Source: Rebecca billardiae RCC1528 (Eukaryota; Protista; Haptophyta). From it: a stretch of 64,000 nt of DNA. The notes under the pieces were generated by a model. The model was not told the origin of the DNA. It was given only the letters and a program-made list of their open reading frames with translations, and did no database searches. Location of the stretch: positions 1,364,001 to 1,428,000 of the forward strand of contig OZ251240.1 of NCBI GenBank assembly GCA_965240325.2, written 5' to 3'. The translations under genes were made by a program, and so were the position numbers. Positions 29,185 to 58,191 of the stretch are shown here, piece by piece (position 1 is the stretch's first letter; every line of letters starts with the position of its first letter).

Positions 29185-30036
29185 AGAGGCAGATGGCGAC
29201 GCAAGCTCGCCCCCTTCGCAAGCGGCGAGGCCACCGCGCGCCGAACAAAAGCAGTCCTAAAAGACCCCAGTCCGGCCTGAAAAGATTCATCCGGAGAACC
29301 GGGAAAGCCGCGAAAAGCGCAAAACTCAATAAAAGGCCATCAACAAACCGACGTCGTACAGAATTGATGAGCGCAACAGCGATGACAACTCGATCTGCCG
29401 ATAGACCCTTCGGCCGTCCGCCCGGCCGTCGTCGCGGCCGCCCTTGTGCAAGTTCAAAGGGCTGTTTGCGCAACACTGTACGACCGTGCTCCCGACGGCG
29501 GCTGCATTCTATGCACACGGTTTGTATTGACGGCCACCCGGCCGCGCGTAGCAGCGCGGTTGGTCACCGTCAGGTTGCAGCGGCGGATCCGCAATGGTCC
29601 GACAACGTCCGACCACGGAGCGGGCCGCGCGTTCGTTACTAGTTACTGACGCACACATTCCGCAGTATTTGTGGTTGTACCGGCTATGCGCCGAACCGGA
29701 CGAACCATGTCATGGGGCCTATCTTGCGCCCGATTGCGAGGGTATTGGCAAGTGCGTTGCGACCGAGCGGACCGACCGGTGGGTAATCTCGTTGCTGGTC
29801 ACGGGGGCGGCCACGCCGGTCCCGCAGTTACACCAATATCACCTGAGCGCTGACTGTTGACGCGTGGCCTACTCATCGAGGTTGTAGTTGGGCAGCGCGG
29901 GCTACGCGCGCCGCAACTGGCGGATGAGCCGGCGTCGGAAACTCCGGCCTCAGGTGGACGAATCATCGATCATCAAGCAAAACATCAGCGCAGGACTTGA
30001 AAAGGAAAGAAGCAGGGCTGGAATCTGCTAAAAACC

Positions 30037-30110
30037 CGAGCACGACCAGGTTCGAACTGGCGACCTTCTCATCCGAGGTGAGACGCGGTAATCCACTCCG
30101 CTACGTGCCC
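30037..30110 (-). tRNA. tRNA-Arg (anticodon UCG)
   Basis: GGGCACG acceptor stem, D arm GCGG-AGTGGATTA-CCGC, anticodon arm TCTCA-CCTCGGA-TGAGA, T arm GCCAG-TTCGAAC-CTGGT, A20 and G73. A T5 Pol III terminator follows at 30030-30034. Confidence 0.88.
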
Positions 30111-30434
30111 ATCCAGCAGCAGAATCGGGTCAGGAGCAGGGTACATGACCTCAATGTTTGCATTACAATGTTATCCCTGCTCGATTGTTGGTCCGGTCGT
30201 CTTTCACGCGCGCTATTCCGTAAATTGAAAAGAAAAGCACGCGTGACGATCGTCATCATCATCCTTTTTTTCCGCCGCCGACAAATTTTAATTTTGCTGT
30301 CGACGTCCGCCGACCGCCGTGGCCTCCCGCGGTCTCGACGATGACTGAGTCGGTCTGAGTCTGATAGTCGATTGCACTCCGAGACCGCTGGCGCTGGTGA
30401 GCATCGGACCGATCGCTGGCAGCATGAACATGAT

Positions 30435-33981: not shown

Positions 33982-36900
33982 ATGGCCCTCGGCAAAGGCG
34001 AGCCGGCGGTGGGCGCGAAGATGTCGCTGCCCACGCCGAGCAAGCGCTCGGCCAACTTCGTCACCCGCGTGTGTGACGATCCCACCGCGCTCGTGGACCT
34101 GATGGCGCGGGTGCGCGCGCGAGACCGAGCGCGCGCACAATGAGCGCGCGCCGCGCCGCGCCGCGCCGCGCGCGCCTGAGACATGCCCCTCGGCCGGTCG
34201 CGCGCGCATGGCGGTGCGCGCCCAGACGGGTGCGGACGACCTGGCCGAGCAGCTCCAGGCCCTCGCCTCCAAGGAGCTCGCGCGCCTCTGGGCCACGCTC
34301 AGCGAGCACGTCGACGCGCTGATCGGGCGTGACGAGCATCGCGCGGACGAGGCCGCGGACGGCGCGATGGGCGGCGCGGCGCACACGGGCGCGATCGGCT
34401 TCTTCGAGGCGGTGGTCGAGCTCGCGCGCCAGACGCTCGCGTGCGAGGCGGTCACGCCGCCTGAGCAGATGCACGCCGCCGCGTTTGCGCTGCACGGTGC
34501 GCGCGCGAGCGAGCGAGGGCGTGAGAATGCGCGCGCGCGCGCGCGCGAGGCCATGCCGCGCGCCGCTCGGCGCGCGCTGAGCAGCGCGGCCGTGGTGTGC
34601 GCGCGCGGGCGCGCGCCTCTCGCGCAGACATCATCTTCGAGCTCGAGTCCGAGTCCGCCGCCGAGCTGCAGGACGCCATCGTGCGGCTGTGCGAGGGATG
34701 GTGGCACGCGGGCGCCGCGGGGCGCGAGTCCCTCGTGCCGCAGGCGGTCACGTACGTGCTGGTGCGCGCGCTCGGCGCGGACGCGGGCTCGGCGGACGTG
34801 AAGCGCGCGGCGGCGTTCCGCGGCGCGCTCGCCGCGCTCGACTTCGCCGACCCGTCCATCGGCTCGCTCAAGAAGCTGCTGCTGCACGCGCTGATCAGCC
34901 CGCGCTTCCTGCGGCACGCGGACGGGCGGCGCTGCCTCGTGTCGCTCTGGACGCTCGACCCGGGGTTCGTCGCCGAGCTGCACGCGGCGGTGAAGAACCA
35001 GCTGCCGGTGTGCCGCGCGTCGCTGCGCGCCGCGTACGCCGACGTGTACGCGCGCGCGTGGCGCGCGGCCAGCGGCGACTTTGCGTCCGCCATCGAGGCG
35101 GAGTGCCTGCAAGACCTGATGCACGCGGCCGCGCACGCGCGCACGAGCGCGATGGCGGCCGCGGTGCGCGCGGCGCTGGCGGAGGTGCACGCGCTGAAGG
35201 GGACGAGCCGCGCGGCGGACGAGATGCTCGTGCGGCTGTACGAGCCCATCCTCTGGCGCTCGCTCAAGGTGCCCAACCCGCTCGTCCGGCGCAACGCCGC
35301 CGCGCTCCTCTTTGACGTGTTCCCGCTCGCGCCGCCCGCCGCGCACGGCGCGCGCGCGCTCGACGAGGCGGCGCAGCGCTCGTGGGGTGCGGTGCGCGCG
35401 CTGCTCAAGGACGAGGCGCCGGCGGTGCGCGCGCTCGCGGCGCACGGCGCGGCGCGCTGCCTCGCGCTCTACGCCGAGCTCGCCCCGCCGGGCACGCCCA
35501 AGGCCGTCGCGCACGGCCTCGGCGCCGAGCTCGCGCACGACGCCGCGTCGGCGGCCGTGCGCGTCGCCGCGCTCGACGCGCTCGGCTTCCTCGTCGCGCA
35601 GGCGGCGCCGCCCAGGGCGAAGAAGGGCGGCGCGCAGAAGGGCGGCGCAACGGGTGCGAGGAAGGGCGCGGCGCCGCCGCCCGGCTCGGCCGCCGCCGCC
35701 GGCGCCGACGAGGACGGCGCCGCGGGCGTGTCGGGCGCGGTACAGCTTGCGCTCCGCGCCGCGCTGCCGCACGTCGCGCCGCTCGCGCATGACAGCTGCG
35801 AGCGCGTGCGCGCCGCGCTGCTGCGGCTGCTCGCGCGGCTGCGCGCGCTGCGCACGCCCGCGTGGCACGCGCTCGTGAGCGCGGACGCGCTCGCGCGCCG
35901 GCTGCCGCTCGAGCGCCCGCCGCTGCGCCGCCAGCTCGTCGCCCTGCTCGCTCCCTTGTATCTGCCCACGGCCGGCGGCGGCGGCGGCGGCGGGGCGGGC
36001 GGCGGCGGCGCGGCCGCGCGGCCGCTGGCTCGGCTGCGCGAGCTGTGCGCGGCGCAGCCGCTGTGTGCGCGCGCGCTGCTGCAGAGCGAGGCCACGCACA
36101 CCGCGCACGGCGGCGACGTGCTCGCGCGCGCGCTCGGCGCGCTGCTCGACGACGCGCTCGGCGCGGCGGCGCGCGCGGGCGGTGGCGCGGCGGATGAGGG
36201 CGCGCGCGCGCTCGGCGCCGCGCTCGGCGCCGCGAGCGCGCTGCTCGAGGGCGAGGCGGCCGCCGCCGTCGCGCGCGGCGGCGGCGCTCGCGGCGCGGCG
36301 GCGGCGCGGCCCCTCGCGACGCTCGCCGCCGCGCGCATCGACGCGCGCGCGGGCGAGCGCCTCTGGGCGGCCGCGGCGCCGAGCGCGGACGCGCGCGGCG
36401 CGTTGCGCGCCATCGCCGCGCGGCTGCCGGAGGGATCGGTGCCGGCGGTGAGCGCGGAGTGCGCGGCGGTGCTGCCGGCGGTGATGTCGCCGCACGCGCC
36501 GTCGCCGCACGCGCGCATGGACGCGGCGGCGCGCGCGGACGCGCACCCGCCCGTGACCGCTCCGCTCGGCGCCGCCGACGCCGACGCCGACGGCGCGGGT
36601 GCCGCCGCCGCGCAGTCGGGCGTGCTCGCGTGCGTGTGCGCGTGGCAGCGCGCCGGCCCTCTGCTCGGCTCGGTGCTCGCGGCGCTGCGGATGACGGCCG
36701 CCGTGGCGGCGGCGCAGGAGGAGGGCGGCGGCGATCTCGGTGGCGCCGCGGCCTCCGATGAGAACGGCGGCGGCGCGGCGCGCGCGGGCGGGAAGCGCGC
36801 GCGGCAGCAGCAGCAGCAGCAGCGCGCGCAACCGCCCGCGCCGCCCGCCGCGAGCGCGGCCGAGCACGCCGCCGCGGCCGAGCGCGCCGCGTCGCTGCTG

Positions 36901-38410
36901 CTGCAGCTGCTCGCGAGCGCGCCGCTGCGCGCGCAGCTGCTCTCCGCGCCCGAGCAGCGCGCGGCGCTCGGCGCGATCGGCGCCGAGCTCGAGCGCTGGC
37001 TGCCCGCCCTGCGCGCGCGGCTGGGCGCGCCCGCGCCGCTCGGCGGCGCGGCCGCGAGCGCGCGCGCGCACGCGGTGGCGCAGCTGAGCGCGCAGGGCGC
37101 GCTGCGGCTGGTGCGCGCGCTGGGCAAGCTCGCGACGCACCTGGCGCTGCCGCACGGCGACGACGACGACGACGACGCGGAAGGGCGCGCGCGCGCGCTG
37201 CGGCTGCTCCGATCGCTCGGCGCGTGGGGCTGCGAGCTCGCGCGCGACGCGTCAGCGCGCGGCTTTGGCGCGCCGGCCTCGGCAGCCGGCGCCGTGCCGG
37301 CGGCGAGCCGCGCGCTGCGCGCCGTGCAGGCGGCCGCGCCGCCGCCGGCGGACACGCCGCCGCGCGCGCGCCCGAGGCGCGCCGAGCCGGCGGAGGCGGA
37401 GGGCGCGGCGCGCGCGGACGCGGTGGGCTGGGCCTGCGCCGCGCTCGTCGCGTGCGTCGACGCGCACGCCGACGCGGCGGCGGTCGGGCTGTGCGCGGCG
37501 CCGGAGGGCGGCGCGGAGGCCGGCGCACTCGCGCGCGCCGCCGCCGAGTGCGCGTGCGCCGCACTCGGCGCGTGCAGCGCGCGCGCCGCGGCGGGCGGCT
37601 CGTCGGCGCACGTGTGCGCGCAGCGGCGCGCGCTCGCGCTCGCGTGGCAGCTGCTGGATGGCGGCGCGGCGGAGGAGGGCGGCGTGGGTGAGGGCTCGGA
37701 GGCGGACGCGGAGGGCGCGCCCGCGGCCGCGCAGCTCTCCGCGCAGATCGTGCGCGCCGCCGCCGCCGCCGCGCCGCGCGCCGCCGCGGCGATCGACGCG
37801 GCGCTGCGCGCGGACGGCGCGGACGCGGACGCCCTCGACGCGCGCACCAACCTGCAGCTGAGCGCGGCCGAGCTGCGCGCGGGCACGTCCGCGCTGCTCG
37901 CGCTGTGCGCGCACGCGCCGCACGCGCGCGTCGGCGCGCTCGTCTGCGCGCTCATCGGCGCGGCGCTCGACGCGCGCGCCGCGCTCGGCGCGGCGCCGGG
38001 CGGCGCGCGCGGCGCAGACGACGCCGACGCCGACGTCGACGCCGACGCGGAGGGCGCGCGCGGCGTCGCGCTCGTGCCGACGCTCGGGCTCCCGCCGCTG
38101 CCCACGGCCGCGCTCGAGGTGCGCGCGCGCGCGCCGAGCGCGCCGCCACGCCTGCCGCGCGCGCGCTGAGTGCGCCGCCCGCGCGCCCCCTTCGGCGGTT
38201 GCCTGTCCCACGCAGGCGCTCGCGCGCGCGAGCAGCGGTGGCAGCGGCAGTGGCGCGAGCGCCGAGCTCGGTCGCGCCGTCGCCGCCGAGCTCGAGGCGC
38301 TGCGCGTTGCCGAGCCGAGCGCCGACGCACCGGACGCGGCGTGGCTGTGCCGGCTGGGCCGCGCGCTCGGCTGCTCCGAGCCGCAGCTGCTGCGCGCGCG
38401 CGCGTGCTGA
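33982..38410 (+). CDS. NCAPG2: Condensin II non-SMC subunit G2 (exons 33982-34110, 34226-34496, 34628-38118, 38216-38410)
   Basis: Conserved 'LCEGWW', 'DF.DPSIGSLKKLLL', 'AYADVYARAW', 'IEAECLQDLM' and 'LYEPILWRSL..PNPLVRRNAAALLFDVFPL'. Three GT-AG introns restore one frame. The start could also be 34021. Confidence 0.9.
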
Positions 38411-42287: not shown

Positions 42288-44178
42288 ATGTCGCCGCCTC
42301 ACGAGGAGGAGGCGGAGCCGCTCACGGGCCACGGCGGCACGGGCGCGTCGAGCGCTCGGGAGCGCGCGGCGTCGACGCTCGCGCAGGACCGGCTGGCGAT
42401 GGTCCTCCTCTTCGTGCTGTACACGCTGCAGGGCATCCCGATGGGCCTGTCCGCGAGCATCCCGTTCCTGCTGCAGTCGCGCGTCACGTACAAGGAGCAG
42501 GCGGTCTTCTCGCTCGTGTCGGTGCCCTTCTCGCTGAAGCTGCTGTGGGCGCCGATCGTCGACGGCTTCTACTCCGCGCGCTTCGGCCGGCGCAAGTCGT
42601 GGCTCGTGCCCATCCAGCTGCTCTGCGGCGCGACGATGGTGCTGGGCTCGTCGCGGCTCGAAGGGCTGATGGGCGACGCGCCCGGCAGCACGCCGGACGT
42701 GGGCTCGCTCGCGCGGTACTTTGGCTTCCTCTTCTTCCTGATGGCGACGCAGGACATCGCCGTCGACGGCTGGGCGCTCACCATGCTCTCGCCCGGCCGC
42801 GTCGCGTGGGCGGGCACGATCAACACGGTCGGTCAGACGCTCGGCTACTTCACCTCGTACGTCGGCTTCCTCGCGCTCAACGACGAGGCCACGTGCAACG
42901 CGTACCTGCGCGGTGCGCCGGCGAGCGGCGGGCTGGTGAGCCTCTCGGCGTTCGTGGCGTTCTGGGGCTGGGTCTTCATCGGCGCCACGCTCCTCGTGCT
43001 CGCGTGCAAGGCGGAGGGCGCGGACGCGGAGGTGCCCTCGGGCGTGCTCGCCATGTACAGGTGAGGCGCAGCGCACCGCACCGCACCGCACTGCGCACCG
43101 CACCGCACCGCACTGCGCACCGCACCGCACCGCACTGCGCACCGCACCGCAGCAGCGCACCGCGCACTGCGCACCGCACCGCAGCTCCGCCGTGACGCCG
43201 GCGCGGCCCCGCCGCGCGCGGCGCGGCTCGCGGCGCGGGTGCGCGCAGGGAGGCGCTCGAGTGCGCGCGGCTGCCGCCGGTGCGCACGTACGCGCTCGTG
43301 CTGCTCACCGTCAAGCTGGGCAGCGCGGCCGCGGACGCGGGCACGTCGCTCAAGCTGACCGAGTACGGCATGCCCAAGGAGGAGCTCGCCTTCCTCTCGC
43401 CCTTCCTCGCGAGCGCGGGCATCATCGTGCCGATGCTGATCGCCAAGCTCACCACGGGCCCGCGCCCGCTGAGCGTGTACCTGGTAGGCGTGCCCGCGCG
43501 GCTGCTGCTCAACGTGCTCTACTGGTACGCGGTGCCGCTCGCCGCGCGCGCGTACGGCCCCGAGCCGAGCGTGAGCAAGCCCGCGTTCTACGCGGTGATC
43601 GTGAGCAGCGCGCTCGTCAACGTGTTCGCGGTGAACATGATGTTCGTCTCGCAGATGGCCTTTGCCAACCGCGTCGCCGACCCGTCGATCGGCGGCACGT
43701 ACATCACGCTCATCAACACCGTCGCAAACCTCGGTGCGCGCGCGCGTGCGGTGCGCGCGCGCGTGCGGTGCGCGCGCGCGCCGAGCCGAGCCGCAAGCGC
43801 GCCGCGCGCCGCCGAGCCGCGCCTTCTGCGCTGAGACGCGGAGTCGCGCGCGCGCGCGGCGCAGGCGGCACATGGACTTCGAGCGTGGCGCTGTACGTGC
43901 TCGACTCGCTCACCACGCGGCAGTGCACGCACGCGCGCACGGGGCGGCCCATCGGCTCCGGCCGCTCGGGGCAGCCGCTGTGCGAGACCAAGCTGGACGC
44001 CGAGTGCACGCGGCTCAAGGGCGCGTGCGAGATGGTCTCGGACGGGTACCGCACCGAGCTGCTGGCGTGCACCGCCCTCGGCATCGCGTGGCTGCTCCTC
44101 TTCAGGCCGGTGGTGCTGCGGCTGCAGGCGACGCCCATCAACGCGTGGCGGCTGCGCTCGCACTGGAAGAACGGGTGA
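42288..44178 (+). CDS. SLC33A1: Acetyl-CoA transporter 1 (AT-1, MFS) homolog (exons 42288-43060, 43249-43733, 43865-44178)
   Basis: 'LYTLQGIPMGL', 'PFSLKLLWAPIVD', 'FGRRKSWLVP', 'ATQDIAVDGWALTML' and 'DPSIGGTYITLINTVANLGGTW'. Two GT-AG introns. Confidence 0.92.
43072..43182. repeat. (CGCAC)n pentanucleotide microsatellite in intron 1 of the acetyl-CoA transporter gene
   Basis: Repeated CGCAC units interrupted by TG. Confidence 0.9.
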
Positions 44179-48980: not shown

Positions 48981-50146
48981 ATGGTGGCGCTCCGGCTGAC
49001 GGAGTGCGGCGCGCGCTCGTCGCGCTCGGCGGTGGCGCTCGTCGCGCTCGGCGTGCTCGCCGCGCTCGGCGTGCCCGCGTGCGCGCGCTGCCGCCGGCTC
49101 TCGCTGCGCGCCGCCGCGCCCGCGCGCGCGCGGCCGCGCATGCGCGAGGGCGCGGCGGCGGCCGACGGTTCGGCGCGCGTGCGCGCGCTGCTGCGCGCGC
49201 GCGGCTCGACGGCGCGCCTCGTGCCCGCGGGCGAGCCGGCGGGCGCGCAGCCGATCAAGACGCTCCTCTTCGCCGCGCCGGGCGCGCCCGCCGCCGCGCC
49301 GCCCCTCGCCTTCGCCATCGTGCTCGACGGGAGCCGCGTGGACGAGGGCGCGCTCGCGGCCGCGCTCGGCGTCGCGCGCGTGGCGCTCGCCGAGCGCGGC
49401 GCGGCGGAGCGCGCGAGCGGCTGCGCGATGGGCTCGCTCCCGCCGTGCGCCACGCTCCTCGCGCCGCGCGCGCCCACCGTCGTCGACGCGCGCGTCGCGG
49501 CGTGCGAGCGTCCGCTGATCGGCGGGTGCGGCGCGCCCGAGCACCGGCTTTGGCTGCCGGCGCCGTCGGAGTTGCTCCGCCTTGCGGGCGGCGAGGGCGC
49601 GCGCGTGCTGGTCGCGCCGATCGCGCTGCGCGGCGCCGAGGCGCCCCCGCCCCCGCCGCCCCCGCCGCCACCCGCCACCGCCGCCGCCGCGCCGCTGCCC
49701 GCCCTCGACCTGAGCGCGGGCGCGCGCGTGCAGCTGGCAGGGACGGTGGTCTCGCGCCGCCCGCTCGCGCGCACGCTGTGCTTCGTCACGCTGGTGCCGG
49801 GCGCGGAGGTGCTGCCGGCCGGCGCGGCGCCGGGCGGCGCGCTCGGCGCAGCCGCCGCCGCGCAGCAGCACCACCAGCCCGACGTGCGCGCCGCGCGCCG
49901 GCTGTGGCGCCCCGTGTGCGCTGAGCTGTGCCGCGGCCGCCGCCCGCCGCCTCCGCCGGTCGAGGTCCAGCTCGTGCTGGGGCGCCGGCTGCAGGCGGCG
50001 CTGGGGGCGCAGCGGGCGGAGGGGGACGACGGCGCGGAGGCGCTCGCCGAGCTGATCCGCCGCGTGCGCGTCGGCTCGCGCGTGCTCGCCACCGGCATCC
50101 CCGCCGTGCGCGAGCCCGAGCCCGCAGAGCCGCCCGGCGCCGCGGC

Positions 50147-50190
<44 letters not shown>

Positions 50191-50378
50191 GGCTTTGGGG
50201 CGCGCTGCGCGCGGCGCTGCGCAGGCTGCGCCGGCCGCGCTCGCTGCGCGCGCGGCTCGAGCGCGTGCGGCAGGTGGACGTGCGCTGTGTCGCGCTCGAG
50301 CTGCTGCCGCCGCTGCCGCCACCGCGTGCGCACCCAGCCGCGGCCGCGCCCGCCGCGCCCGCCGCCGCCGCGCCGAGC

Positions 50379-50415
<37 letters not shown>

Positions 50416-52445
50416 TCCGCGCGCCGAGCGCAGACGGCGAGCGCGTGCTGCGGCTGCCGCCCGCGGCCGCGCCCGTGCTGGTGGACGACGCGCGCTCGGC
50501 GCGCCTGCTCGCGGCACAGCTCCACGCGCTGCTCGAGCGCTCGGGCGCGCTCCCCACCCAGACTGGTGCCGCCGCCGCTGCCGCGCCCGCGGGAGATTGC
50601 ATCTCCGTGGAGGGAGCGGGAGATGCCATCTCCGTGGAGGGAGATGCCATCTCCGTGGAGGGGGGTGGCATCTCCCTCGCCACCGCGCCGCCCGCGCTGC
50701 TCGCCGGGATCGACGTCGAGTGGGAGCCCGAGCGCGCGGCGGCGCCGGGGCAGCCGCGGCCGCGCCACCCAGCATCGACGCTGCAGCTGGCGCTGTGCAC
50801 GCCCGCGCACGCGGAGGCGGCGGTGCGCGCGGCCGACGAGAGCGGCCGCTCCGACGCACCGCCGGACCGGCCGGCGCTGTGCGACTGGCCGGCGGGCTCG
50901 CGCGTGGCGGTCATCGACCTGCTGGCGCTGTGGCCGCAGCCGCAGCCGCAGCCGCAGCCGCAGCAGCAGCGGCCGCGCGACGAGGGTTCAGAGCGCGGCG
51001 CGGCCGCCGCCGCCGCCGCCGACGCCGATCACGGCGCCGCCGACGGCGGCGCTGCGGCGGCCGAGCTCGCAGCCGCGGCGTCCGCGCTGGACGAGGCGCT
51101 GCGCGCCGTGCTGACCTCCGCGCGCGTGCTCAAGCTCGGCATCGGCGGCGCCTCCGACCTCGCGCGGCTGCGCCGCTCCTACCCGCGCGCGGCCGCGTTT
51201 GGCGCGTGCGCGCCTCTGCTGGACGTGGCGGAGCTCGCGGCCGCCGCGTGGCCGGGCTCGGGCGCGGCGCGCGCGCGCGGGCTGAGCGCGCTGTGCGCGC
51301 GCGCGCTCGGCGCGCCGCTGGACAAGTCGCTGCAGTGCGCGCACTGGGGCGCGCGCCCGCTCACGCCGCCGATGCTCGAGTACGCCGCGCTCGACGCGCT
51401 GGCCCTGTGCGCGCTGTACGGCGCGCTGCGTCCGCGCCTGCGCGCGCGGCTGGGCGGCGGCGCGGGCGGGGCGGACGCGGCCGCGGCCGCGCTCGAGCGC
51501 GCGTGGCCCGCGCCCGACGCGCCGTCGCTGCCGCCCGCCGTCGCGCGGCGGCGCGCCGACGCCGCGCGGTGGCGCACGGCCCGCGCCGAGCGCGCCCACG
51601 CCGACGGCGCGCCGGCGGCCTCCGCGCCGCCCCTCGCCATCTCCGCGCGCGAGCTGCGCGTGACGGCGTCGCTGCGGCCGCTGCTGCGCACGTGGCTAGG
51701 GCACGCGCCGCCGCGCGCGCGCGAGCAGCACCCGAAGGACGGCGCGCTGCTGCTCGCCGCCTTCCCGCGCGGCGTGTCGCGCGGCGAGGCCGAGGCCGCC
51801 GCCGCCGCCGCGCGCAAGGCGTGGGCGCCGCCGCCCGAGCTCGCGCTCGGCGGCTACGACCGTCGCGGCGGCGTCGTGCGCGTGGCGGACGGCGCGGCCA
51901 TCTTCGTCACGTTTGGCGGAGGCGGCGGCCGGGGCGGCGGCGGCGGCGCGCGGCGCAGGTACCCCAACGAGCTGCGCTGGGTGCGCGCCACCCCCGCCAC
52001 GGAGAGCGACGGCGGCGGCGGCGACGGTGGCGGGGCCGCGCGCGTGCTCGAGCTCAGCTGGTGGCTCCCCGCCGGCGTCGGGCCGGACGACCCTCTGCGC
52101 GCCGCGCTGCTCGGCAGCGGCGCGGCGGGCGCGGCGGAGGGTGCGCGGCGCGAGGCCGGCCCGCCGCCGACCGTGCTGCTCTTCGCGCGCGCCAGCCAGC
52201 GCGGCGGCTTCGTCCTCTGCGGGCGCGTGGCGTTCGAGCGGCCCGCCGGGCTGCCAGGCGCGTGGGACGCGAGCGCGCTCGCCGCCGCCGCGCCGGGCGG
52301 CGTCATCTGGCGGCTGCTCGACAGCGAGGCCCTCGCGCGGTGCGAGGCGGCCGAGGCGCGCAACCTGCTGCGCGTCGCGCTCGGCGAGGCGGCGGCGGAG
52401 CACAATCCGCCAGGCCAGAGCGCCGCACCGCGTGACTCGGCGTGA
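48981..52445 (+). CDS. Multidomain protein: YbaK/ProX-like deacylase + OB-fold + DEDDy 3'-5' exonuclease + DUF3427-like domain
   Basis: 1154-aa ORF. YbaK 'IKTLLF' and 'GCAMGSLPP'; OB-like 'RVQLAGTVVSRRPLARTLCFVTL'; Exo I 'GIDVEW', Exo II 'GGASDL', 'LDKSLQCAHW..RPL', Exo III 'YAALDA'; C-terminal 'AIFVTF..YPNE..LSWWL..VLLFAR..FVLCGRV'. Confidence 0.8.
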
Positions 52446-52693: not shown

Positions 52694-55600
52694 CGAGCCG
52701 TCAGTATCCGCACCGCCACGTCTCGCGCACTTCGAAGCCCACCGCGCCCATCCCACCAGCGCACGGGCGCACCAGCGCACGGGCGCACCGGCGCGCCGGG
52801 TGGGCGCACGCCACCAGCCTCAGCTCGGATATGGGCATCGAGGCGCGCCAAGCGCTCGTGTGGCGGAACTTGACGGTACTGGCGGCAGCCATATCGAGCG
52901 CGCTCGAGCCGTGCCCGTGCGAGCCGACGGTATCCGCACCGCCACGTCTCGCGCACTTCGAAGCCCACCGCGCCCATCCCACCAGCGCACGGGCGCACGG
53001 GCGCACGGGCGCACCGGCGCGCCGGGTGGGCGGCGCGCCACCAGCCTCAGCTCGGATATGGGCATCGAGGCGCGCCAAGCGCTCGTCTGGCGGCATTGTG
53101 ACGGTGCTGGCAGCAGCCGTACTCGAGCGCGCTCGAGCCGTGCCCGTGCGAGCCGACGGTATCCGCACCGCCACGTCTCGCGCACTTCGAAGCCGACCGC
53201 GCCCATCCCACCAGCGCACGGGCGCACGGGCGCACGGGCGCACCGGCGCGCCGGGTGGGCGGCGCGCCACCAGCCTCAGCTCGGATATGGGGATCGAGGC
53301 GCGCCAAGCGCTCGTCTGGCGGCATTGTGACGGTGCTGGCAGCAGCCGTACTCGAGCGCGCTCGAGCCGTGCCCGTGCGAGCCGTCGGTATCCGCACCGC
53401 CACGTCTCGCGCACTTCGAAGCCCACCGCGCCCATCCCACCAACGCACGGGCGCACGGGCGCACGGGCGCACCGGCGCGCCGGGTGGGCGGCGCGCCACC
53501 AGCCTCAGCTCGGATATGGGCATCGAGGCGCGCCAAGCGCTCGAGTGGAGGCATTGTGACGTTGCTGGCAGCAGCCGTACTCGAGCGCGCTCGAGCCGTG
53601 CCCGTGCGAGCCGACGGTATCCGCACCGCCACGTCTCGCGCACTTCGAAGCCGACCGCGCCCATCCCACCAGCGCACGGGCGCACGGGCGCACGGGCGCA
53701 CCGGCGCGCCGGGTGGGCGGCGCGCCACCAGCCTCAGCTCGGATATGGGGATCGAGGCGCGCCAAGCGCTCGTCTGGCGGCATTGTGACGGTGCTGGCAG
53801 CAGCCGTACTCGAGCGCGCTCGAGCCGTGCCCGTGCGAGCCGTCGGTATCCGCACCGCCACGTCTCGCGCACTTCGAAGCCCACCGCGCCCATCCCACCA
53901 ACGCACGGGCGCACGGGCGCACGGGCGCACCGGCGCGCCGGGTGGGCGGCGCGCCACCAGCCTCAGCTCGGATATGGGCATCGAGGCGCGCCAAGCGCTC
54001 GAGTGGCGGCATTGTGACGGTGCTGGCAGCAGCCGTACTCGAGCGCGCTCGAGCCGTGCCCGTGCGAGCCGACGGTATCCGCACCGCCACGTCTCGCGCA
54101 CTTCGAAGCCCACCGCGCCCATCCCACCAGCGCACGGGCGCACGGGCGCACGGGCGCACCGGCGCGCCGGGTGGGCGGCGCGCCACCAGCCTCAGCTCGG
54201 ATATGGGCATCGAGGCGCGCCAAGCGCTCGTCTGGCGGCATTGTGACGGTGCTGGCAGCAGCCGTACTCGAGCGCGCTCGAGCCGTGCCCGTGCGAGCCG
54301 TCGGTATCCGCACCGCCACGTCTCGCGCACTTCGAAGCCCACCGCGCCCATCCCACCAGCGCACGGGCGCACGGGCGCACGGGCGCACCGGCGCGCCGGG
54401 TGGGCGGCGCGCCACCAGCCTCAGCTCGGATATGGGGATCGAGGCGCGCCAAGCGCTCGTGTGGCGGAGCTTGACGGTGCTGGCAGCAGCCGTACTCGAG
54501 CGCGCTCGAGCCGTGCCGTGCGAGCCGTCGGTATCCGCACCGCCACGTCTCGCGCACTTCGAAGCCCACCGCGCCCATCCCACCAACGCACGGGCGCACG
54601 GGCGCACGGGCGCACCGGCGCGCCGGGTGGGCGGCGCGCCACCAGCCTCAGCTCGGATATGGGGATCGAGGCGCGCCAAGCGCTCGTGTGGCGGAACTTG
54701 AAACTTGACGATGCTGGCAGCAGCCGTACTCGAGCGCGCTCGGGCCGTGTCCGTGCGAGCCGACGGTATCCGCACCGCCACGTCTCGCGCACTTCGAAGC
54801 CCACCGCGCCCATCCCACCAGCGCACGGGCGCACGGGCGCACCGGCGCACCGGCGCGCCGGGTGGGCGGCGCGCCACCAGCCTCAGCTCGGATATGGGCA
54901 TCGAGGCGCGCCAAGCGCTCGTGTGGCGGAACTTGACGGTGCTGGCGGCAGCCGTACTCGAGCGCGCTCGGGCCGTGTCCGTGCGAGCCGACGGTATCCG
55001 CACCGCCACGTCTCGCGCACTTCGAAGCCCACCGCGCCCATCCCACCAGCGCACGGGCGCACGGGCGCACCGGCGCACCGGCGCGCCGGGTGGGCGGCGC
55101 GCCACTAGCCTCAGCTCGGATATGGGCATCGAGGCGCGCCAAGCGCTCGAGTGGCGGCATTGTGACGGTGCTGGCGGCAGCCGTGTCGAGCGCGCTCGAG
55201 CCGTGCCCGTGCGAGCCGACGGTATCCGCACCGCCACGTCTCGCGCACTTCGAAGCCCACCGCGCCCATCCCACCAGCGCACGGGCGCACGGGCGCACGG
55301 GCGCACCGGCGCGCCGGGTGGGCGGCGCGCCACCAGCCTTAGCTCGGATATGGGCATCGAGGCGCGCCAAGCGCTCGAGTGGCGGCATTGTGACGGTGCT
55401 GGCAGCAGCCGTACTCGAGCGCGCTCGAGCCGTGCCCGTGCGAGCCGACGGTATCCGCACCGCCACGTCTCGCGCACTTCGAAGCCCACCGCGCCCATCC
55501 CACCAGCGCACGGGCGCACGGGCGCACGGGCGCACCGGCGCGCCGGGTGGGCGGCGCGCCACCAGCCTCAGCTCGGATATGGGGATCGAGGCGCGCCAAG

Positions 55601-58191
55601 CGCTCATGTGGCGGAACTTGATGGTGCTGGCGGCAGACGTACTCGAGCGCGCGCGGGCCGTGTCCGTGCGAGCTGACGGTATCCGCACCGCCACGTCTCG
55701 CGCACTTCGAAGCCCACCGCGCCCATCCCACCAGCGCACGGGCGCACGGGCGCACCGGCGCACCGGCGCGCCGGGTGGGCGGCGCGCCACCAGCCTCAGC
55801 TCGGATATGGGCATCGAGGCGCGCCAAGCGCTCGAGTGGCGGCATTGTGACGGTGCTGGCGGCAGCCGTGTCGAGCGCGCTCGAGCCGTGCCCGTGCGAG
55901 CCGTCGGTATCCGCATCGCCACGTCTCGCGCACTTCGAAGCCCACCGCGCCCATCCCACCAGCGCACGGGCGCACGGGCGCACGGGCGCACCGGCGCGCA
56001 GGGTGGGCGGCGCGCCACCAGCCTCAGCTCGGATATGGGCATCGAGGCGCGCCAAGCGCTCGAGTGGCGGCATTGTGACGGTGCTGGCAGCAGCCGTACT
56101 CGAGCGCGCTCGAGCCGTGCCCGTGCGAGCCGACGGTATCCGCACCGCCACGTCTCGCGCACTTCGAAGCCCACCGCGCCCATCCCACCAGCGCACGGGC
56201 GCACCAGCGTACGGGCGCACCGGCGCGCCGGTTGGGCGGCGCGCCACCAGCCTCAGCTCGGACATGGGAATCGAGGCGCGCCAAGCGCTCGTGTGGCGGA
56301 ACTTGACGATGCTGGCAGCAGCGGTACTCGAGCGCGCTCGAGCCGTGCCCGTGCGAGCCGGCGGTATCCGCACCGCCACGTCCCGCGCACTTCGAAGCCC
56401 ACCGCGCCCATCCCACCAGCGCACGGGCGCACGGGCGCACGGGCGCACCGGCGCGCCGGGTGGGCGGCGCGCCACCAGCCTCAGCTCGGATATGGGCATC
56501 GAGGCGCGCCAAGCGCTCGAGTGGCGGCATTGTGACGGTGCTGGCAGCAGCCGTACTCGAGCGCGCTCGAGCCGTGCCCGTGCGAGCCGACGGTATCCGC
56601 ACCGCCACGTCTCGCGCACTTCGAAGCCCACCGCGCCCATCCCACCAGCGCACGGGCGCACGGGCGCACGGGCGCACCGGCGCGCCGGGTGGGCGGCGCG
56701 CCACCAGCCTCAGCTCGGATATGGGGATCGAGGCGCGCCAAGCGCTCGTGTGGCGGAACTTGACGGTGCTAGTGGCGGCCATACTCGAGCGCGCTCAAGC
56801 CGTGCCCGTGCGAGCCGTCGGTATCCGCACCGCCACGTCTCGCGCACTTCGAAGCCCACCGCGCCCATCCCACCAGCGCACGGGCGCACCAGCGTACGGG
56901 CGCACCGGCGCGCCGGTTGGGCGGCGCGCCACCAGCCTCAGCTCGGATATGGGCATCGAGGCGCGCCAAGCGCTCGTGTGGCGGAACTTGACGGTGCTAG
57001 TGGCGGCCATACTCGAGCGCGCTCAAGCCGTGCCCTTGCGAGCCGTCGGTATCCGCACCGCCACGTCTCGCGCACTTCGAAGCCCACCGCGCCCATCCCA
57101 CCAGCGCACGGGCGCACGGGCGCACGGGCGCACCGGCGCGCCGGGTGGGCGGCGCGCCACCAGCCTCAGCTCGGATATGGGCATCGAGGCGCGCCAAGCG
57201 CTCGTGTAGCGGAGCTTGACGGTGCTGGCAGCAGCCGTACTCGAGCGCGCTCGAGCCGTGCCCGTGCGAGCCGTCGGTATCCGCACCGCCACGTCTCGCG
57301 CACTTCGAAGCCCACCGCGCCCATCCCACCAGCGCACGGGCGCACGGGCGCACGGGCGCACCGGCGCGCCGGGTGGGCGGCGCGCCACCAGCCTCAGCTC
57401 GGATATGGGAATCGAGGCGCGTCAAGCGCTCGTGTGGCGGAACTTGACGGTGCTGGCAGCAGCCGTACTCGAGCGCGCTCGAGCCGTGCCCGTGCGAGCC
57501 GACGGTATCCGCACCGCCACGTCTCGCGCACTTCGAAGCCCACCGCGCCCATCCCACTGGCAGCGCACGGGCGCACCAGCGCACGGGCGCACGGGCGCAC
57601 GGGCGCACCGGCGCGCCGGGTGGGCGGCGCGCCACCAGCCTCAGCTCGGATATGGGCATCGAGGCGCGCCAAGCGCTCGAGTGGCGGCATTGTGACGGTG
57701 CTGGCAGCAGCCGTACTCGAGCGCGCTCGAGCAGTGCCCGTGCGAGCCGACGGTATCCGCACCGCCACGTCTCGCGCACTTCGAAGCCCACCGCGCCCAT
57801 CCCACCAGCGCACGGGCGCACGGGCGCACGGGCGCACCGGCGCGCCGGGTGGGCGGCGCGCCACCAGCCTCAGCTCGAATATGGGGATCGAGGCGCGCCA
57901 AGCGCTCGAGTGGCGGAACTTGACGGTGCTGGCAGCAGCCGTACTCGAGCGCGCTCGGGCCGTGCCCGTGCGAGCCGTCGGTATCCGCACCGCCACGTCT
58001 CGCGCACTTCGAAGCCCACCGCGCCCATCCCACCAGCGCACGGGCGCACGGGCGCACGGGCGCACCGGCGCGCCGGGTGGGCGGCGCGCCACCAGCCTCA
58101 GCTCGGATATGGGCATCGAGGCGCGCCAAGCGCTCGGTTGGCGGCATTGTGACGGTGCTGGCAGCAGCCGTACTCGAGCGCGCTCGAGCCG
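52694..58191 (+). repeat. 229-bp tandem satellite array (~24 units)
   Basis: CTCAGCTCGGATATGGG recurs about every 229 nt (range about 227-247) from about 52820 to 58100. The unit contains (GCGCACGG)3-4 and the palindrome CTCGAGCGCGCTCGAG. Confidence 0.97.

What the first reader, a model, noticed from the sequence alone, without database searches (positions are those of the whole stretch)
48981..52445. Single-polypeptide YbaK + OB-fold + DEDDy exonuclease + DUF3427-like protein: candidate tRNA quality-control enzyme
Seen: one 1154-aa ORF with a hydrophobic, signal-like N-terminus, a YbaK/ProX-like domain keeping the conserved Lys and GxxxP loop, an OB-like strand set, a DnaQ/WRN/Mut-7-type exonuclease with all DEDDy residues, and a C-terminal motif series resembling DUF3427. 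Known: YbaK-family proteins deacylate mischarged tRNA, OB folds bind anticodons in class IIb synthetases, and RNase D-type DEDDy enzymes trim RNA 3' ends. Inference: the protein may bind, deacylate and then trim or degrade tRNAs, possibly in an organelle. I do not recognise this architecture from characterised proteins.
Basis: partly seen in the sequence, partly recalled or inferred. Interest (0 to 1): 0.75.

Follow-up and report, generated by a model that had tools for sequence, protein, structure and literature searches.

The report
Algal deacylase–exonuclease–base-reader fusion protein
This very GC-rich alga has a real, intronless gene that joins four nucleic-acid modules in one protein: a tRNA-deacylase-type domain, a synthetase-like RNA-binding barrel, an end-trimming exonuclease and a modified-base reader. 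The same fusion is kept in haptophyte, pelagophyte and green algae, and I found no paper that describes it.

Summary
ORF 48981-52445 (+, 1154 aa) fills an 83% GC block with codon periodicity from end to end (GC3 0.95), which the flanks lack.

All four domain calls are supported:
- **YbaK/tRNA_edit:** passes Pfam's threshold; K93 aligns with the catalytic Lys46 of YbaK.
- **OB fold:** confident model; Foldseek ranks LysRS anticodon-binding domains first. An invariant Arg/Phe/Gln set sits where class IIb synthetases read anticodon base U35.
- **DEDDy exonuclease:** passes Pfam's threshold; nearest solved relative is Mut-7/Nibbler; all five catalytic residues are invariant.
- **C-terminal domain:** SRA/DUF3427 fold by model and language-model features, but it fails the PF11907 sequence profile.

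At least 26 proteins from haptophytes, pelagophytes and chlorophytes share the architecture and key residues. In Pavlovales sp. CCMP2436 one spliced transcript contig covers all four domains. No RNA runs were listed for this genome.

Function is inferred. I favour (about 45%) an enzyme that binds tRNA, removes the aminoacyl group and trims the 3' end, gated by a modified base. The main rival (about 25%) is a modified-DNA-directed exonuclease, because every characterised SRA/DUF3427 domain reads 5mC/5hmC in DNA.

It is a new, unstudied architecture built from known domains. The scan's notes list a possibly related YbaK+DEDDy fusion elsewhere in this genome; I did not check it.

The parts
48981..52445 (+). 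Single-exon coding sequence, 1154 codons plus stop
   Evidence: ORF list and translation. GC3 is 0.95 with periodicity throughout and sharp GC borders. It is the only GC3-passing ORF here on either strand.
48981..49160 (+). N-terminal leader (residues 1-60): a hydrophobic signal-like segment at residues 17-32, followed by an Arg/Ala-rich, acid-poor stretch
   Evidence: Kyte-Doolittle maximum 2.68 at residue 17; 13 R+K against 3 D+E in the first 70 residues. A similar leader is present in P0001, P0002 and P0018. It is also present in Diacronema lutheri when the ORF is read from an upstream in-frame ATG. The targeting role is inferred; no predictor was available.
49245..49556 (+). YbaK/ProX-type aminoacyl-tRNA editing domain (Pfam match at residues 89-192; the domain spans about 70-200)
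   Evidence: PF04073 scores 34.5-37.6 bits against a cut-off of 25.5. K93 aligns with Lys46 of H. influenzae YbaK, and G147/G151/P155 align with the YbaK loop. These residues are kept in 24-26 of 26 family members. Compact homologue P0007 matches the trans-editing proteins APE2540 (3e-16) and TTHA1699 (2e-14).
49704..50312 (+). OB-fold nucleic-acid-binding domain (residues 242-444) with two low-complexity loop insertions
   Evidence: AF2 model: mean pLDDT 74, with 70 residues at 90 or above, and the canonical b1-b2-b3-helix-b4-b5 order. The best Foldseek rows (E 3e-3 and up, probability 1.0; none reaches the tool's 0.001 line) are LysRS anticodon-binding domains or OBodies. All 50 VIA rows are OB folds: SSB, PriB, PolC, AsnRS, LysRS, MCM at Z 6.4-7.8. 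hhalign places R260/F268 on E. coli AspRS R28/F35 (E 0.015). R260, F268 and Q330 are kept in 24-26 of 26 members. The window protein has no Pfam hit here; homologue P0014 scores 24 bits for PF01336 against a cut-off of 27.
50448..51446 (+). DEDDy 3'-5' exonuclease domain (residues about 490-822), split by linker insertions
   Evidence: PF01612 scores 52.4 bits against a cut-off of 23.6. D578, E580, D726, Y801 and D805 are kept in 24-25 of 26 members. The nearest solved sequences, found with homologue P0007, are Mut-7 homologue/Nibbler 7jw2 (9e-12), then NrnC, RNase D, Rrp6, EXD2 and WRN.
50589..50675 (+). In-frame 21/27-bp tandem repeat (about 3 copies) in the linker before the exonuclease core
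   Evidence: TRF rows and the sequence itself. It accounts for the only dip in GC3.
50793..50900 (+). Insertion of about 33-36 residues inside the exonuclease domain, absent from all aligned homologues
   Evidence: Alignments A1 and A3 and the pairwise alignments. GC3 stays at 0.97 here, so it reads as coding.
51636..52394 (+). C-terminal module (residues 886-1138): a helical lead-in plus an SRA/DUF3427-fold beta core (about residues 955-1120)
   Evidence: AF2 model: mean pLDDT 56.6, core 70-78. VIA against 48,161 chains: top hit is the SauUSI target-recognition domain 811-953 (Z 6.6, rmsd 3.3, 100 aligned); ranks 2-13 are all SRA or modification-dependent readers. ESM Atlas by shape: DUF3427 clusters, TM by target 0.79. 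By features: DUF3427/SRA/AspBHI_N at 0.90 for the window and 0.94 (188 shared features) for homologue P0007. Y994, N996, W1027, R1070, G1081 and R1082 are kept in 22-24 of 26 members.

Best explanation
The gene encodes a four-module enzyme that acts on tRNA, probably aminoacyl-tRNA. The class IIb-synthetase-like OB fold holds the anticodon loop of tRNAs with U at position 35. The YbaK-type domain takes the aminoacylated CCA end and hydrolyses the ester bond. The DEDDy exonuclease then trims the freed 3' end. The C-terminal SRA/DUF3427-fold domain reads a modified (flipped-out) base and so selects or gates substrates. Long low-complexity linkers would let the modules reach both ends of a tRNA. 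In haptophytes, the N-terminal signal-like leader followed by a basic stretch suggests delivery to the plastid or a membrane. Shown here: the gene is real and single-exon; all four folds are present; the catalytic and binding residues are conserved across three algal phyla. Inferred: the substrate, the order of steps and the location.
For: Both catalytic domains pass Pfam's curated cut-offs. K93 aligns with the mutagenesis-critical Lys46 of H. influenzae YbaK (PMC3532385). The domain's closest solved relatives are free-standing trans-editing proteins, and every characterised member of this superfamily deacylates aminoacyl-tRNA (established knowledge). Foldseek ranks LysRS anticodon-binding domains first for the OB fold. 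hhalign puts R260/F268 on AspRS R28/F35, E 0.015 against 0.1 for SSB. R260, F268 and Q330 lie on strands 1, 2 and 3 and are invariant in the family. This matches R136/F144/Q155 of human LysRS, which stack on and bond to U35/U36 (PMC11643047). The nearest solved relatives of the exonuclease are RNA 3'-end trimmers: Mut-7/Nibbler, NrnC, RNase D and Rrp6. The four-domain order recurs in 26 aligned proteins from haptophytes, pelagophytes and chlorophytes. It is expressed as one spliced mRNA in Pavlovales sp. CCMP2436.
Against: There is no biochemical or expression evidence for this gene. All characterised SRA/DUF3427 domains bind modified DNA, not RNA (PMC7913695, PMC6765204). VIA scores SSB, PriB, PolC and MCM OB folds as high as the synthetase ones. 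The OB region has no significant sequence match to PF01336 or to any solved chain. The hhalign match covers only 28 columns, and Q330 was placed by pattern and strand position, not by alignment. Relatives of the exonuclease also include DNA enzymes (WRN, EXD2, some NrnC). The C-terminal model is of low confidence (pLDDT 56.6).
Confidence: 0.45

Rival explanations
1. It is a modification-directed DNA exonuclease. The SRA/DUF3427-fold domain docks on 5mC/5hmC (or another modified base) in DNA, the OB fold holds single-stranded DNA, and the WRN/EXD2-like DEDDy domain resects 3' ends. The role would be organelle-DNA turnover, repair, or restriction of methylated foreign (for example giant-virus) DNA. 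The YbaK-like domain would be a ligand-binding or regulatory module, not a tRNA deacylase.
For: The best structural matches of the C-terminus are all modified-DNA readers: SauUSI TRD, SUVH5/6/9, UHRF1, ScoMcrA, MspJI, AspBHI, LpnPI, TagI. DUF3427 proteins bind 5mC/5hmC DNA and restrict phage T4gt (PMC6765204), and the SauUSI TRD is an SRA fold that flips 5mC (PMC7913695). SSB, PriB, PolC and MCM OB folds tie for the top VIA scores. The Monoraphidium homologue carries a true SSB domain in its C-terminal part. PF01612 includes the DNA exonucleases WRN and EXD2.
Against: It does not explain why the YbaK catalytic Lys and the GxxxP loop are kept in 24-26 of 26 members across three phyla. It does not explain the class IIb-type Arg/Phe/Gln set. 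The closest sequence relatives of the exonuclease are RNA enzymes. No DNA role is known for any YbaK-family domain (established knowledge).
Confidence: 0.25
2. It is a small-RNA or other non-tRNA RNA 3'-end trimmer of the Mut-7/Nibbler kind. The YbaK, OB and SRA-like domains would serve only as RNA-end or modified-base binding modules.
For: The best solved sequence match of the exonuclease is the Mut-7 homologue (Nibbler), 9e-12 over nearly the whole domain. Mut-7 family enzymes carry an accessory C-terminal domain that governs activity and localisation (PMC11347159, abstract as listed).
Against: No MUT7-C/PIN-like domain was found by Pfam. The conserved deacylase residues and the anticodon-type OB residues have no role in this scheme. 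The signal-like leader does not fit a cytoplasmic silencing factor.
Confidence: 0.1
3. It is an artefact of a GC-rich genome: two or more neighbouring genes, or a gene plus in-frame non-coding DNA, read as one ORF.
For: Stops are rare at 83% GC, and other frames over the same stretch hold ORFs of 835 and 658 aa. About a third of the protein is low-complexity Ala/Pro/Gly linker. No RNA data are available for this genome.
Against: GC3 periodicity is unbroken along the ORF. The same domain order occurs in 26 proteins from three phyla. The Diacronema lutheri orthologue is also a single 2898-nt exon. A spliced transcript contig from Pavlovales sp. CCMP2436 carries the whole fusion.
Confidence: 0.03

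Closest known systems
Free-standing YbaK/ProX trans-editing deacylases (H. influenzae and E. coli YbaK; APE2540; TTHA1699)
   Same: It matches Pfam PF04073 above threshold. It keeps the catalytic Lys (K93 = YbaK K46) and the Gly-x3-Pro loop. The best solved sequence matches are these proteins.
   Different: Those are single-domain proteins of about 150-160 aa. Here the domain is the N-terminal module of a 1154-aa fusion. It fails the NCBIfam YbaK equivalog models (13.7 bits against a cut-off of 243), so it is not an orthologue of YbaK proper. Its substrate is unknown.
Mut-7/Nibbler, RNase D, Rrp6, NrnC, EXD2 and WRN DEDDy exonucleases (PF01612)
   Same: It has the same fold family and all five DEDDy residues. 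Mut-7 homologue 7jw2 is the best solved match.
   Different: Pfam detected no HRDC domains (RNase D/Rrp6), no MUT7-C domain and no helicase. The RNase D equivalog scores 34 bits against a cut-off of 299. The window copy also has a unique insertion of about 35 residues.
N-terminal anticodon-binding OB fold of class IIb aminoacyl-tRNA synthetases (LysRS, AspRS, AsnRS)
   Same: It has an OB fold. LysRS domains top the Foldseek list. The Arg, Phe and Gln sit on strands 1, 2 and 3 with the same Arg-to-Phe spacing as human LysRS R136/F144 (PMC11643047).
   Different: No synthetase catalytic core follows. There are long loop insertions. The sequence match is below the Pfam cut-off, and structurally it is no closer to these than to SSB, PriB or MCM OB folds.
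DUF3427 / SRA-fold modified-cytosine readers (SauUSI target-recognition domain, McaZI group, SUVH5/6, UHRF1, ScoMcrA, MspJI, AspBHI)
   Same: It shows the same predicted fold by three routes: VIA against PDB, ESM Atlas by shape, and language-model features for two family members.
   Different: Neither the window protein, the four closest homologues nor any of 84 relatives reaches PF11907 or another SRA Pfam model. There is no sequence match to any solved chain. It is fused to an exonuclease and a deacylase, not to HNH, PLD or PD-(D/E)XK endonucleases. It is eukaryotic, and its ligand is unknown.

Membership tests
YbaK/ProX aminoacyl-tRNA editing domain (Pfam PF04073, INS superfamily) | Profile match above Pfam's gathering score | tested here: met
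   34.5 bits for the whole protein and 37.6 bits for the N-terminal 240 aa, against a cut-off of 25.5. Homologues score 43-89 bits.
YbaK/ProX aminoacyl-tRNA editing domain (Pfam PF04073, INS superfamily) | Catalytic lysine (H. influenzae YbaK K46) and the conserved Gly-x3-Pro loop | tested here: met
   K93 aligns with K46 of 1dbu, and G151...P155 aligns with the YbaK loop. K is kept in 24 of 26, G151 in 26 of 26 and P155 in 24 of 26 family members. The role of K46 is cited from PMC3532385.
YbaK/ProX aminoacyl-tRNA editing domain (Pfam PF04073, INS superfamily) | Hydrolysis of an aminoacyl-tRNA ester bond | not testable with these tools
   This needs a deacylation assay.
YbaK proper (Cys-tRNAPro deacylase, NCBIfam equivalogs PRK10670 / TIGR00011) | Equivalog-level profile score | tested here: not met
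   13.7 bits against a cut-off of 243, and 11.8 bits against a cut-off of 153.
DEDDy 3'-5' exonuclease (Pfam PF01612; RNase D/WRN/Mut-7 type) | Profile match above the gathering score | tested here: met
   52.4 bits against a cut-off of 23.6.
DEDDy 3'-5' exonuclease (Pfam PF01612; RNase D/WRN/Mut-7 type) | ExoI D-x-E, ExoII D, ExoIII Y-x3-D | tested here: met
   D578/E580, D726 and Y801/D805 are invariant in A1 and kept in 24-25 of 26 members. The ExoII and ExoIII motifs align with Nibbler in homologue P0007.
RNase D (TIGR01388) / Mut-7 (with MUT7-C) | Full-length equivalog score; HRDC or MUT7-C accessory domains | tested here: not met
   The rnd equivalog scores 34 bits against a cut-off of 299. 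Pfam detected neither HRDC nor Mut7-C.
OB-fold nucleic-acid-binding domain, tRNA_anti-codon type (Pfam PF01336) | Five-stranded OB barrel with a helix between strands 3 and 4 | tested here: met
   Model pLDDT 74 with the expected order of elements. Every listed row in both fold searches is an OB fold.
OB-fold nucleic-acid-binding domain, tRNA_anti-codon type (Pfam PF01336) | Profile match above the gathering score | tested here: not met
   The window protein has no hit. The best in the family is P0014 at 24 bits against a cut-off of 27.
Class IIb synthetase anticodon-binding domain | Arg/Phe/Gln residues that read anticodon base U35 | tested here: inconclusive
   hhalign aligns R260 and F268 with AspRS R28 and F35, but over only 28 columns at E 0.015. 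Q330 was placed by strand position only. All three are invariant. The role of the triad is cited from PMC11643047.
DUF3427 (Pfam PF11907) / SRA clan | Profile match to PF11907 or another SRA-clan model | tested here: not met
   There is no hit for the window protein or its four closest homologues, and none among 84 relatives at E 0.01. One of 47 C-terminal segments reaches PF18491 SRA, at E 0.083.
DUF3427 (Pfam PF11907) / SRA clan | SRA-type fold | tested here: met
   SauUSI TRD Z 6.6, with the next twelve rows all SRA or modification readers. Atlas by shape gives TM 0.79 by target to a DUF3427 cluster. Feature scores are 0.90 and 0.94. Caveats: the model pLDDT is 56.6 and the Z scores are middling.
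DUF3427 (Pfam PF11907) / SRA clan | Pocket that accepts a flipped 5-methylcytosine; binding of modified DNA | not tested
   I could not map the SauUSI pocket residues (Y831, F841, I842, D858, W868; PMC7913695) onto this low-confidence model. Binding needs an assay.

The most novel reading that the evidence does not exclude
The SRA/DUF3427-fold domain reads a modified base in RNA, for example a methylated cytosine near the anticodon of U35-containing tRNAs. That reading would gate deacylation and 3'-end trimming. This would make the family a one-protein, modification-sensing tRNA surveillance or inactivation enzyme of algal plastids, and the first SRA-fold reader of an RNA modification.
Probability: 0.12. 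Interest if true: 0.85.

Novelty: new variant of a known kind. Interest (0 to 1): 0.62.

Why it matters
Trans-editing deacylases are known as small free-standing proteins or as synthetase inserts, and 3' exonucleases that act on tRNA are separate enzymes. A conserved fusion of a deacylase, an anticodon-type OB fold, an exonuclease and a modified-base reader would physically couple removal of the amino acid to removal of the tRNA's 3' end. It would be a ready-made candidate for tRNA quality control or stress-triggered tRNA inactivation in ecologically important algae, including bloom-formers such as Prymnesium and Aureococcus.

If the DNA reading is right instead, it would be a eukaryotic, restriction-like reader-plus-exonuclease for modified DNA. 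Either way, the C-terminal domain extends the bacterial DUF3427/SRA sensor family into eukaryotes in a new context. The family is compact enough in some species (about 730-850 aa) for direct biochemistry.

Tried and rejected
- **RNA evidence for this genome.** The look-up of sequencing runs listed no run.
- **Word search with the full-length alignment A1.** It returned only P0004, because low-complexity words filled the candidate list. Repeating it with the compact homologue P0003 worked.
- **Sequence-profile searches of solved structures.** The OB profile (A4) and the C-terminal profiles (A5, A7) gave nothing meaningful.
- **Pfam on the C-terminus.** Neither the window protein nor the 84 and 47 relatives gave a significant DUF3427 or SRA hit. 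I therefore do not file the domain under PF11907.
- **Foldseek against PDB for the C-terminal model.** It gave only weak rows (best E 0.08), although those were the right kind.
- **Poly(A) check on contig L003.** Inconclusive.
- **Intron at residues 521-560.** Rejected: the GC3 dip is a 21-bp in-frame repeat.
- **Unspliced intron at residues 605-640.** Rejected: GC3 there is 0.97.
- **Green alga as the source.** Rejected as the most likely origin. The nearest named relatives are pavlovophyte haptophytes, Diacronema lutheri and Pavlovales sp. CCMP2436. The species was not determined.
- **Gene neighbours.** They are unrelated (an acetyl-CoA transporter-like exon upstream, a minisatellite downstream). 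The Proteasome / WD40 / gene / Ankyrin order seen in Diacronema and in the contigs of P0001 and P0002 was not seen among the ORFs I scanned in this window.
Full report
**1. The observation**

The window holds an ATG-initiated ORF at 48981-52445 (+) of 1154 codons. An in-frame TGA lies three codons upstream of the ATG.

Length alone proves little. The stretch is 82-88% GC, and other frames over it hold ORFs of 835 and 658 aa. Three things show it is coding in this frame from end to end:
- The ORF coincides exactly with the high-GC block, whose flanks drop to 44-67% GC.
- GC at codon positions 1/2/3 is 0.87/0.67/0.95, and the periodicity holds in every 40-codon window. The flanks read 0.54/0.57/0.60 and 0.73/0.70/0.70.
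- In a six-frame scan, only this ORF passes a GC3 filter over the stretch.

The single dip, at residues 521-560, is an in-frame 21-bp repeat in a linker. An insertion at about residues 605-640 is unique to this copy but keeps GC3 at 0.97. Other genes in the window (a condensin II subunit, an acetyl-CoA transporter-like exon and others) show that this is a eukaryotic nuclear genome with long exons.

**2. The domains**

*YbaK.* Pfam places tRNA_edit at residues 89-192, scoring 34.5 bits against a cut-off of 25.5. K93 aligns with Lys46 of H. influenzae YbaK, and G147/G151/P155 align with the YbaK loop. Mutagenesis showed Lys46 to be critical (cited in PMC3532385). For the compact homologue P0007, the nearest solved sequences are the free-standing trans-editing proteins APE2540 (3e-16) and TTHA1699 (2e-14), ahead of YbaK itself. 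The NCBIfam YbaK equivalogs are not met. It is therefore a member of the superfamily, not an orthologue of YbaK.

*OB fold.* Pfam finds nothing in residues 201-540. A model built on a 12-sequence alignment has mean pLDDT 74, with 70 residues at 90 or above and the canonical strand-strand-strand-helix-strand-strand order.
- The best Foldseek rows are LysRS anticodon-binding domains and OBodies (probability 1.0, E from 3e-3; none reaches the tool's 0.001 line).
- VIA-align against 48,161 chains lists only OB folds at Z 6.4-7.8. SSB, PriB, PolC, MCM, AsnRS and LysRS are tied.
- The fold is therefore confirmed, but the structure scores alone do not decide between a tRNA and an ssDNA ligand.

A profile-profile comparison with the E. 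coli AspRS/LysRS/AsnRS OB domains aligns 28 columns (E 0.015). It puts R260 on AspRS R28 and F268 on F35. The same test against E. coli SSB gives 15 columns at E 0.1. R260, F268 and Q330 lie on strands 1, 2 and 3 and are kept in 26, 24 and 25 of 26 family members. In human LysRS, R136, F144 and Q155 stack on and bond to U35/U36 (PMC11643047). The Arg-to-Phe spacing of 8 is the same here. I take this as suggestive, not proven.

*Exonuclease.* PF01612 scores 52.4 bits against a cut-off of 23.6. D578/E580, D726 and Y801/D805 are invariant. The nearest solved sequences, found with P0007, are the Mut-7 homologue (Nibbler) 7jw2 at 9e-12, then NrnC, RNase D, Rrp6, Pol I, EXD2 and WRN. Pfam detected no HRDC or MUT7-C domain.

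*C-terminus.* There is no Pfam hit. The model on four sequences is weak overall (pLDDT 56.6) but has a beta core at 70-78. Four results point the same way:
- VIA-align's best chain of 48,161 is the SauUSI target-recognition domain, residues 811-953 (Z 6.6, rmsd 3.3, 100 aligned). The next twelve rows are SUVH5, ScoMcrA, UHRF1, MspJI, SUVH9, KRYPTONITE, TagI, AspBHI, LpnPI and SUVH6.
- The ESM Atlas search by shape returns DUF3427 clusters (TM by target 0.79), plus a chlorophyte exonuclease cluster that is this same family.
- The language-model feature search gives DUF3427/SRA/AspBHI_N at 0.90 for the window.
- For the independent homologue P0007 it gives 0.94 with 188 shared features.

The SauUSI domain is the Pfam DUF3427 domain and has an SRA fold that flips out 5-methylcytosine (PMC6765204, PMC7913695). 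Against this, no member of the family reaches PF11907 by sequence, and profiles find no solved chain. The domain is DUF3427/SRA-like in fold, but it is an unannotated, divergent eukaryotic branch.

**3. The family**

Word searches and an exhaustive profile search with the C-terminal domain found 88 representatives at E 1e-3 or better among 1.84 billion proteins. Of 84 scanned, 28 carry PF01612 and 18 carry PF04073; most of the rest are fragments.

| Lineage | Named members |
|---|---|
| Haptophytes | Diacronema lutheri, Pavlovales sp. CCMP2436, Prymnesium parvum |
| Pelagophytes | Aureococcus anophagefferens (two), Pelagophyceae sp. CCMP2097, Chrysophaeum taylorii |
| Chlorophytes | Chlorella sp. 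A99 (found by the C-terminal profile); Monoraphidium minutum and Pleodorina starrii (YbaK-exonuclease homologues in which the C-terminal domain was not seen) |

All named members are photosynthetic algae. The sources name them only 'hypothetical', '3'-5' exonuclease domain-containing', '3'-5'-exoribonuclease' or 'YbaK/EbsC'. Pfam confirms YbaK plus exonuclease in most members scanned from all three groups. A 26-sequence alignment shows that the key residues of all four modules are near-invariant.

The Diacronema gene is also a single exon of 2898 nt. In Pavlovales sp. CCMP2436 the gene has introns. A 2906-nt contig from a sample that also holds MMETSP-labelled transcripts matches the genome at 100% identity in separate blocks, which marks it as a spliced mRNA. 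It carries one 941-aa ORF that aligns with residues 72-1134 of the window protein in a single stretch, E 1e-89.

**4. The leader**

Residues 17-32 are strongly hydrophobic and are followed by an Arg/Ala-rich, acid-poor stretch. P0001, P0002 and P0018 have the same layout. Diacronema shows it too when read from an in-frame ATG 48 codons upstream of the annotated start.

In algae with secondary plastids, this signal-peptide-plus-transit-like layout is the usual plastid-import leader (established knowledge). An EXD2-like membrane anchor is the alternative. No predictor was available, so location remains inferred. Chlorophyte members vary at the N-terminus.

**5. Mechanism**

I favour a tRNA-directed enzyme (0.45). 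The OB fold would hold the anticodon loop, YbaK would remove the amino acid, DEDDy would trim the 3' end, and the SRA-like domain would read a modified base.
- *For:* the conserved deacylase site; the class IIb-type residues; RNA-type exonuclease relatives; and the fact that most cellular tRNA is charged, so a tRNA 3' exonuclease would need a deacylase.
- *Against:* every characterised SRA/DUF3427 domain reads DNA, and the OB evidence is modest.

The main rival (0.25) is a modified-DNA-directed exonuclease for organelle DNA turnover, repair or restriction of methylated foreign DNA. It explains the C-terminus well but leaves the conserved YbaK site unexplained. A Mut-7/Nibbler-like small-RNA trimmer (0.10) and an annotation artefact (0.03) are less likely. 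The remainder is unassigned.

**6. Novelty**

Five paper searches were run, on DUF3427, on YbaK with exonuclease, SRA, RNase D or Mut-7, on the class IIb anticodon-binding domain and on SauUSI. None found a description of this fusion. None combined YbaK with OB fold, anticodon or DUF3427. The domains are known; the four-domain combination, and a eukaryotic DUF3427/SRA-like domain attached to a deacylase and an exonuclease, are not. I rate it a new variant of known kinds, conserved and testable, with its function open.

Notes of this scan list a DUF1853 + DEDDy + YbaK fusion and a DUF3427-like fusion elsewhere in the same genome. I did not check them. If they are real, the YbaK-exonuclease pairing recurs.

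Noticed in passing
window 52694-58191: A 5.5-kb minisatellite of 24 copies of a 228-229-bp unit (95-96% matches) starts 249 bp after the gene's stop codon. Each unit contains an 8-bp (GCGCACGG-like) micro-repeat.
   Followed up: partly
window 50589-50675: An in-frame 21/27-bp tandem repeat inside the coding sequence adds about three copies of a 7-residue unit to a linker. It is the only place in the ORF where GC3 falls to 0.75.
   Followed up: yes
window 50793-50900: An insertion of about 35 residues sits between the ExoI motif and the next conserved strand of the exonuclease domain. It is absent from all 25 aligned homologues, and its GC3 of 0.97 suggests it is translated.
   Followed up: partly
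P0014 (Monoraphidium minutum), residues 837-931: This chlorophyte homologue has a bona fide SSB domain (PF00436, 55 bits) in its C-terminal part where the others have the SRA-like domain. It also has the family's best PF01336 score in the OB position. This could be a gene-model fusion or a real domain swap.
   Followed up: no
L004 3854-4000 (Diacronema lutheri JAGTXO010000015.1): The annotated start of the orthologue KAG8463546.1 probably lies too far downstream. An in-frame ATG 48 codons upstream adds a hydrophobic, signal-like leader like the one in the window protein.
   Followed up: partly
L012 6001-6633 (Pavlovales sp. CCMP2436 MU631307.1): The genome annotation calls only a 210-aa protein (KAJ1641436.1), which is the last exon of the orthologue. 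The transcript contig L011 shows a 941-aa product spliced from at least six blocks.
   Followed up: yes
L001, L002, L004-L006: The gene order Proteasome subunit / WD40 (Sof1-like) / small ORF / this gene / ankyrin-repeat gene is shared by Diacronema lutheri and the two unnamed contigs that carry P0001 and P0002. It was not seen among the ORFs I scanned in the window.
   Followed up: partly
window 34525-38166 (+) and 43196-43831 (+): There is a long single-exon ORF with a condensin II non-SMC subunit domain (153 bits), and an exon of an acetyl-CoA transporter-like gene. Both have GC3 of about 0.95.
   Followed up: no
window 30036-30111 (-): ARAGORN calls one tRNA-Arg (TCG) gene. It lies next to, or inside the 5' edge of, a GDSL-lipase-like ORF on the same strand.
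   Followed up: no
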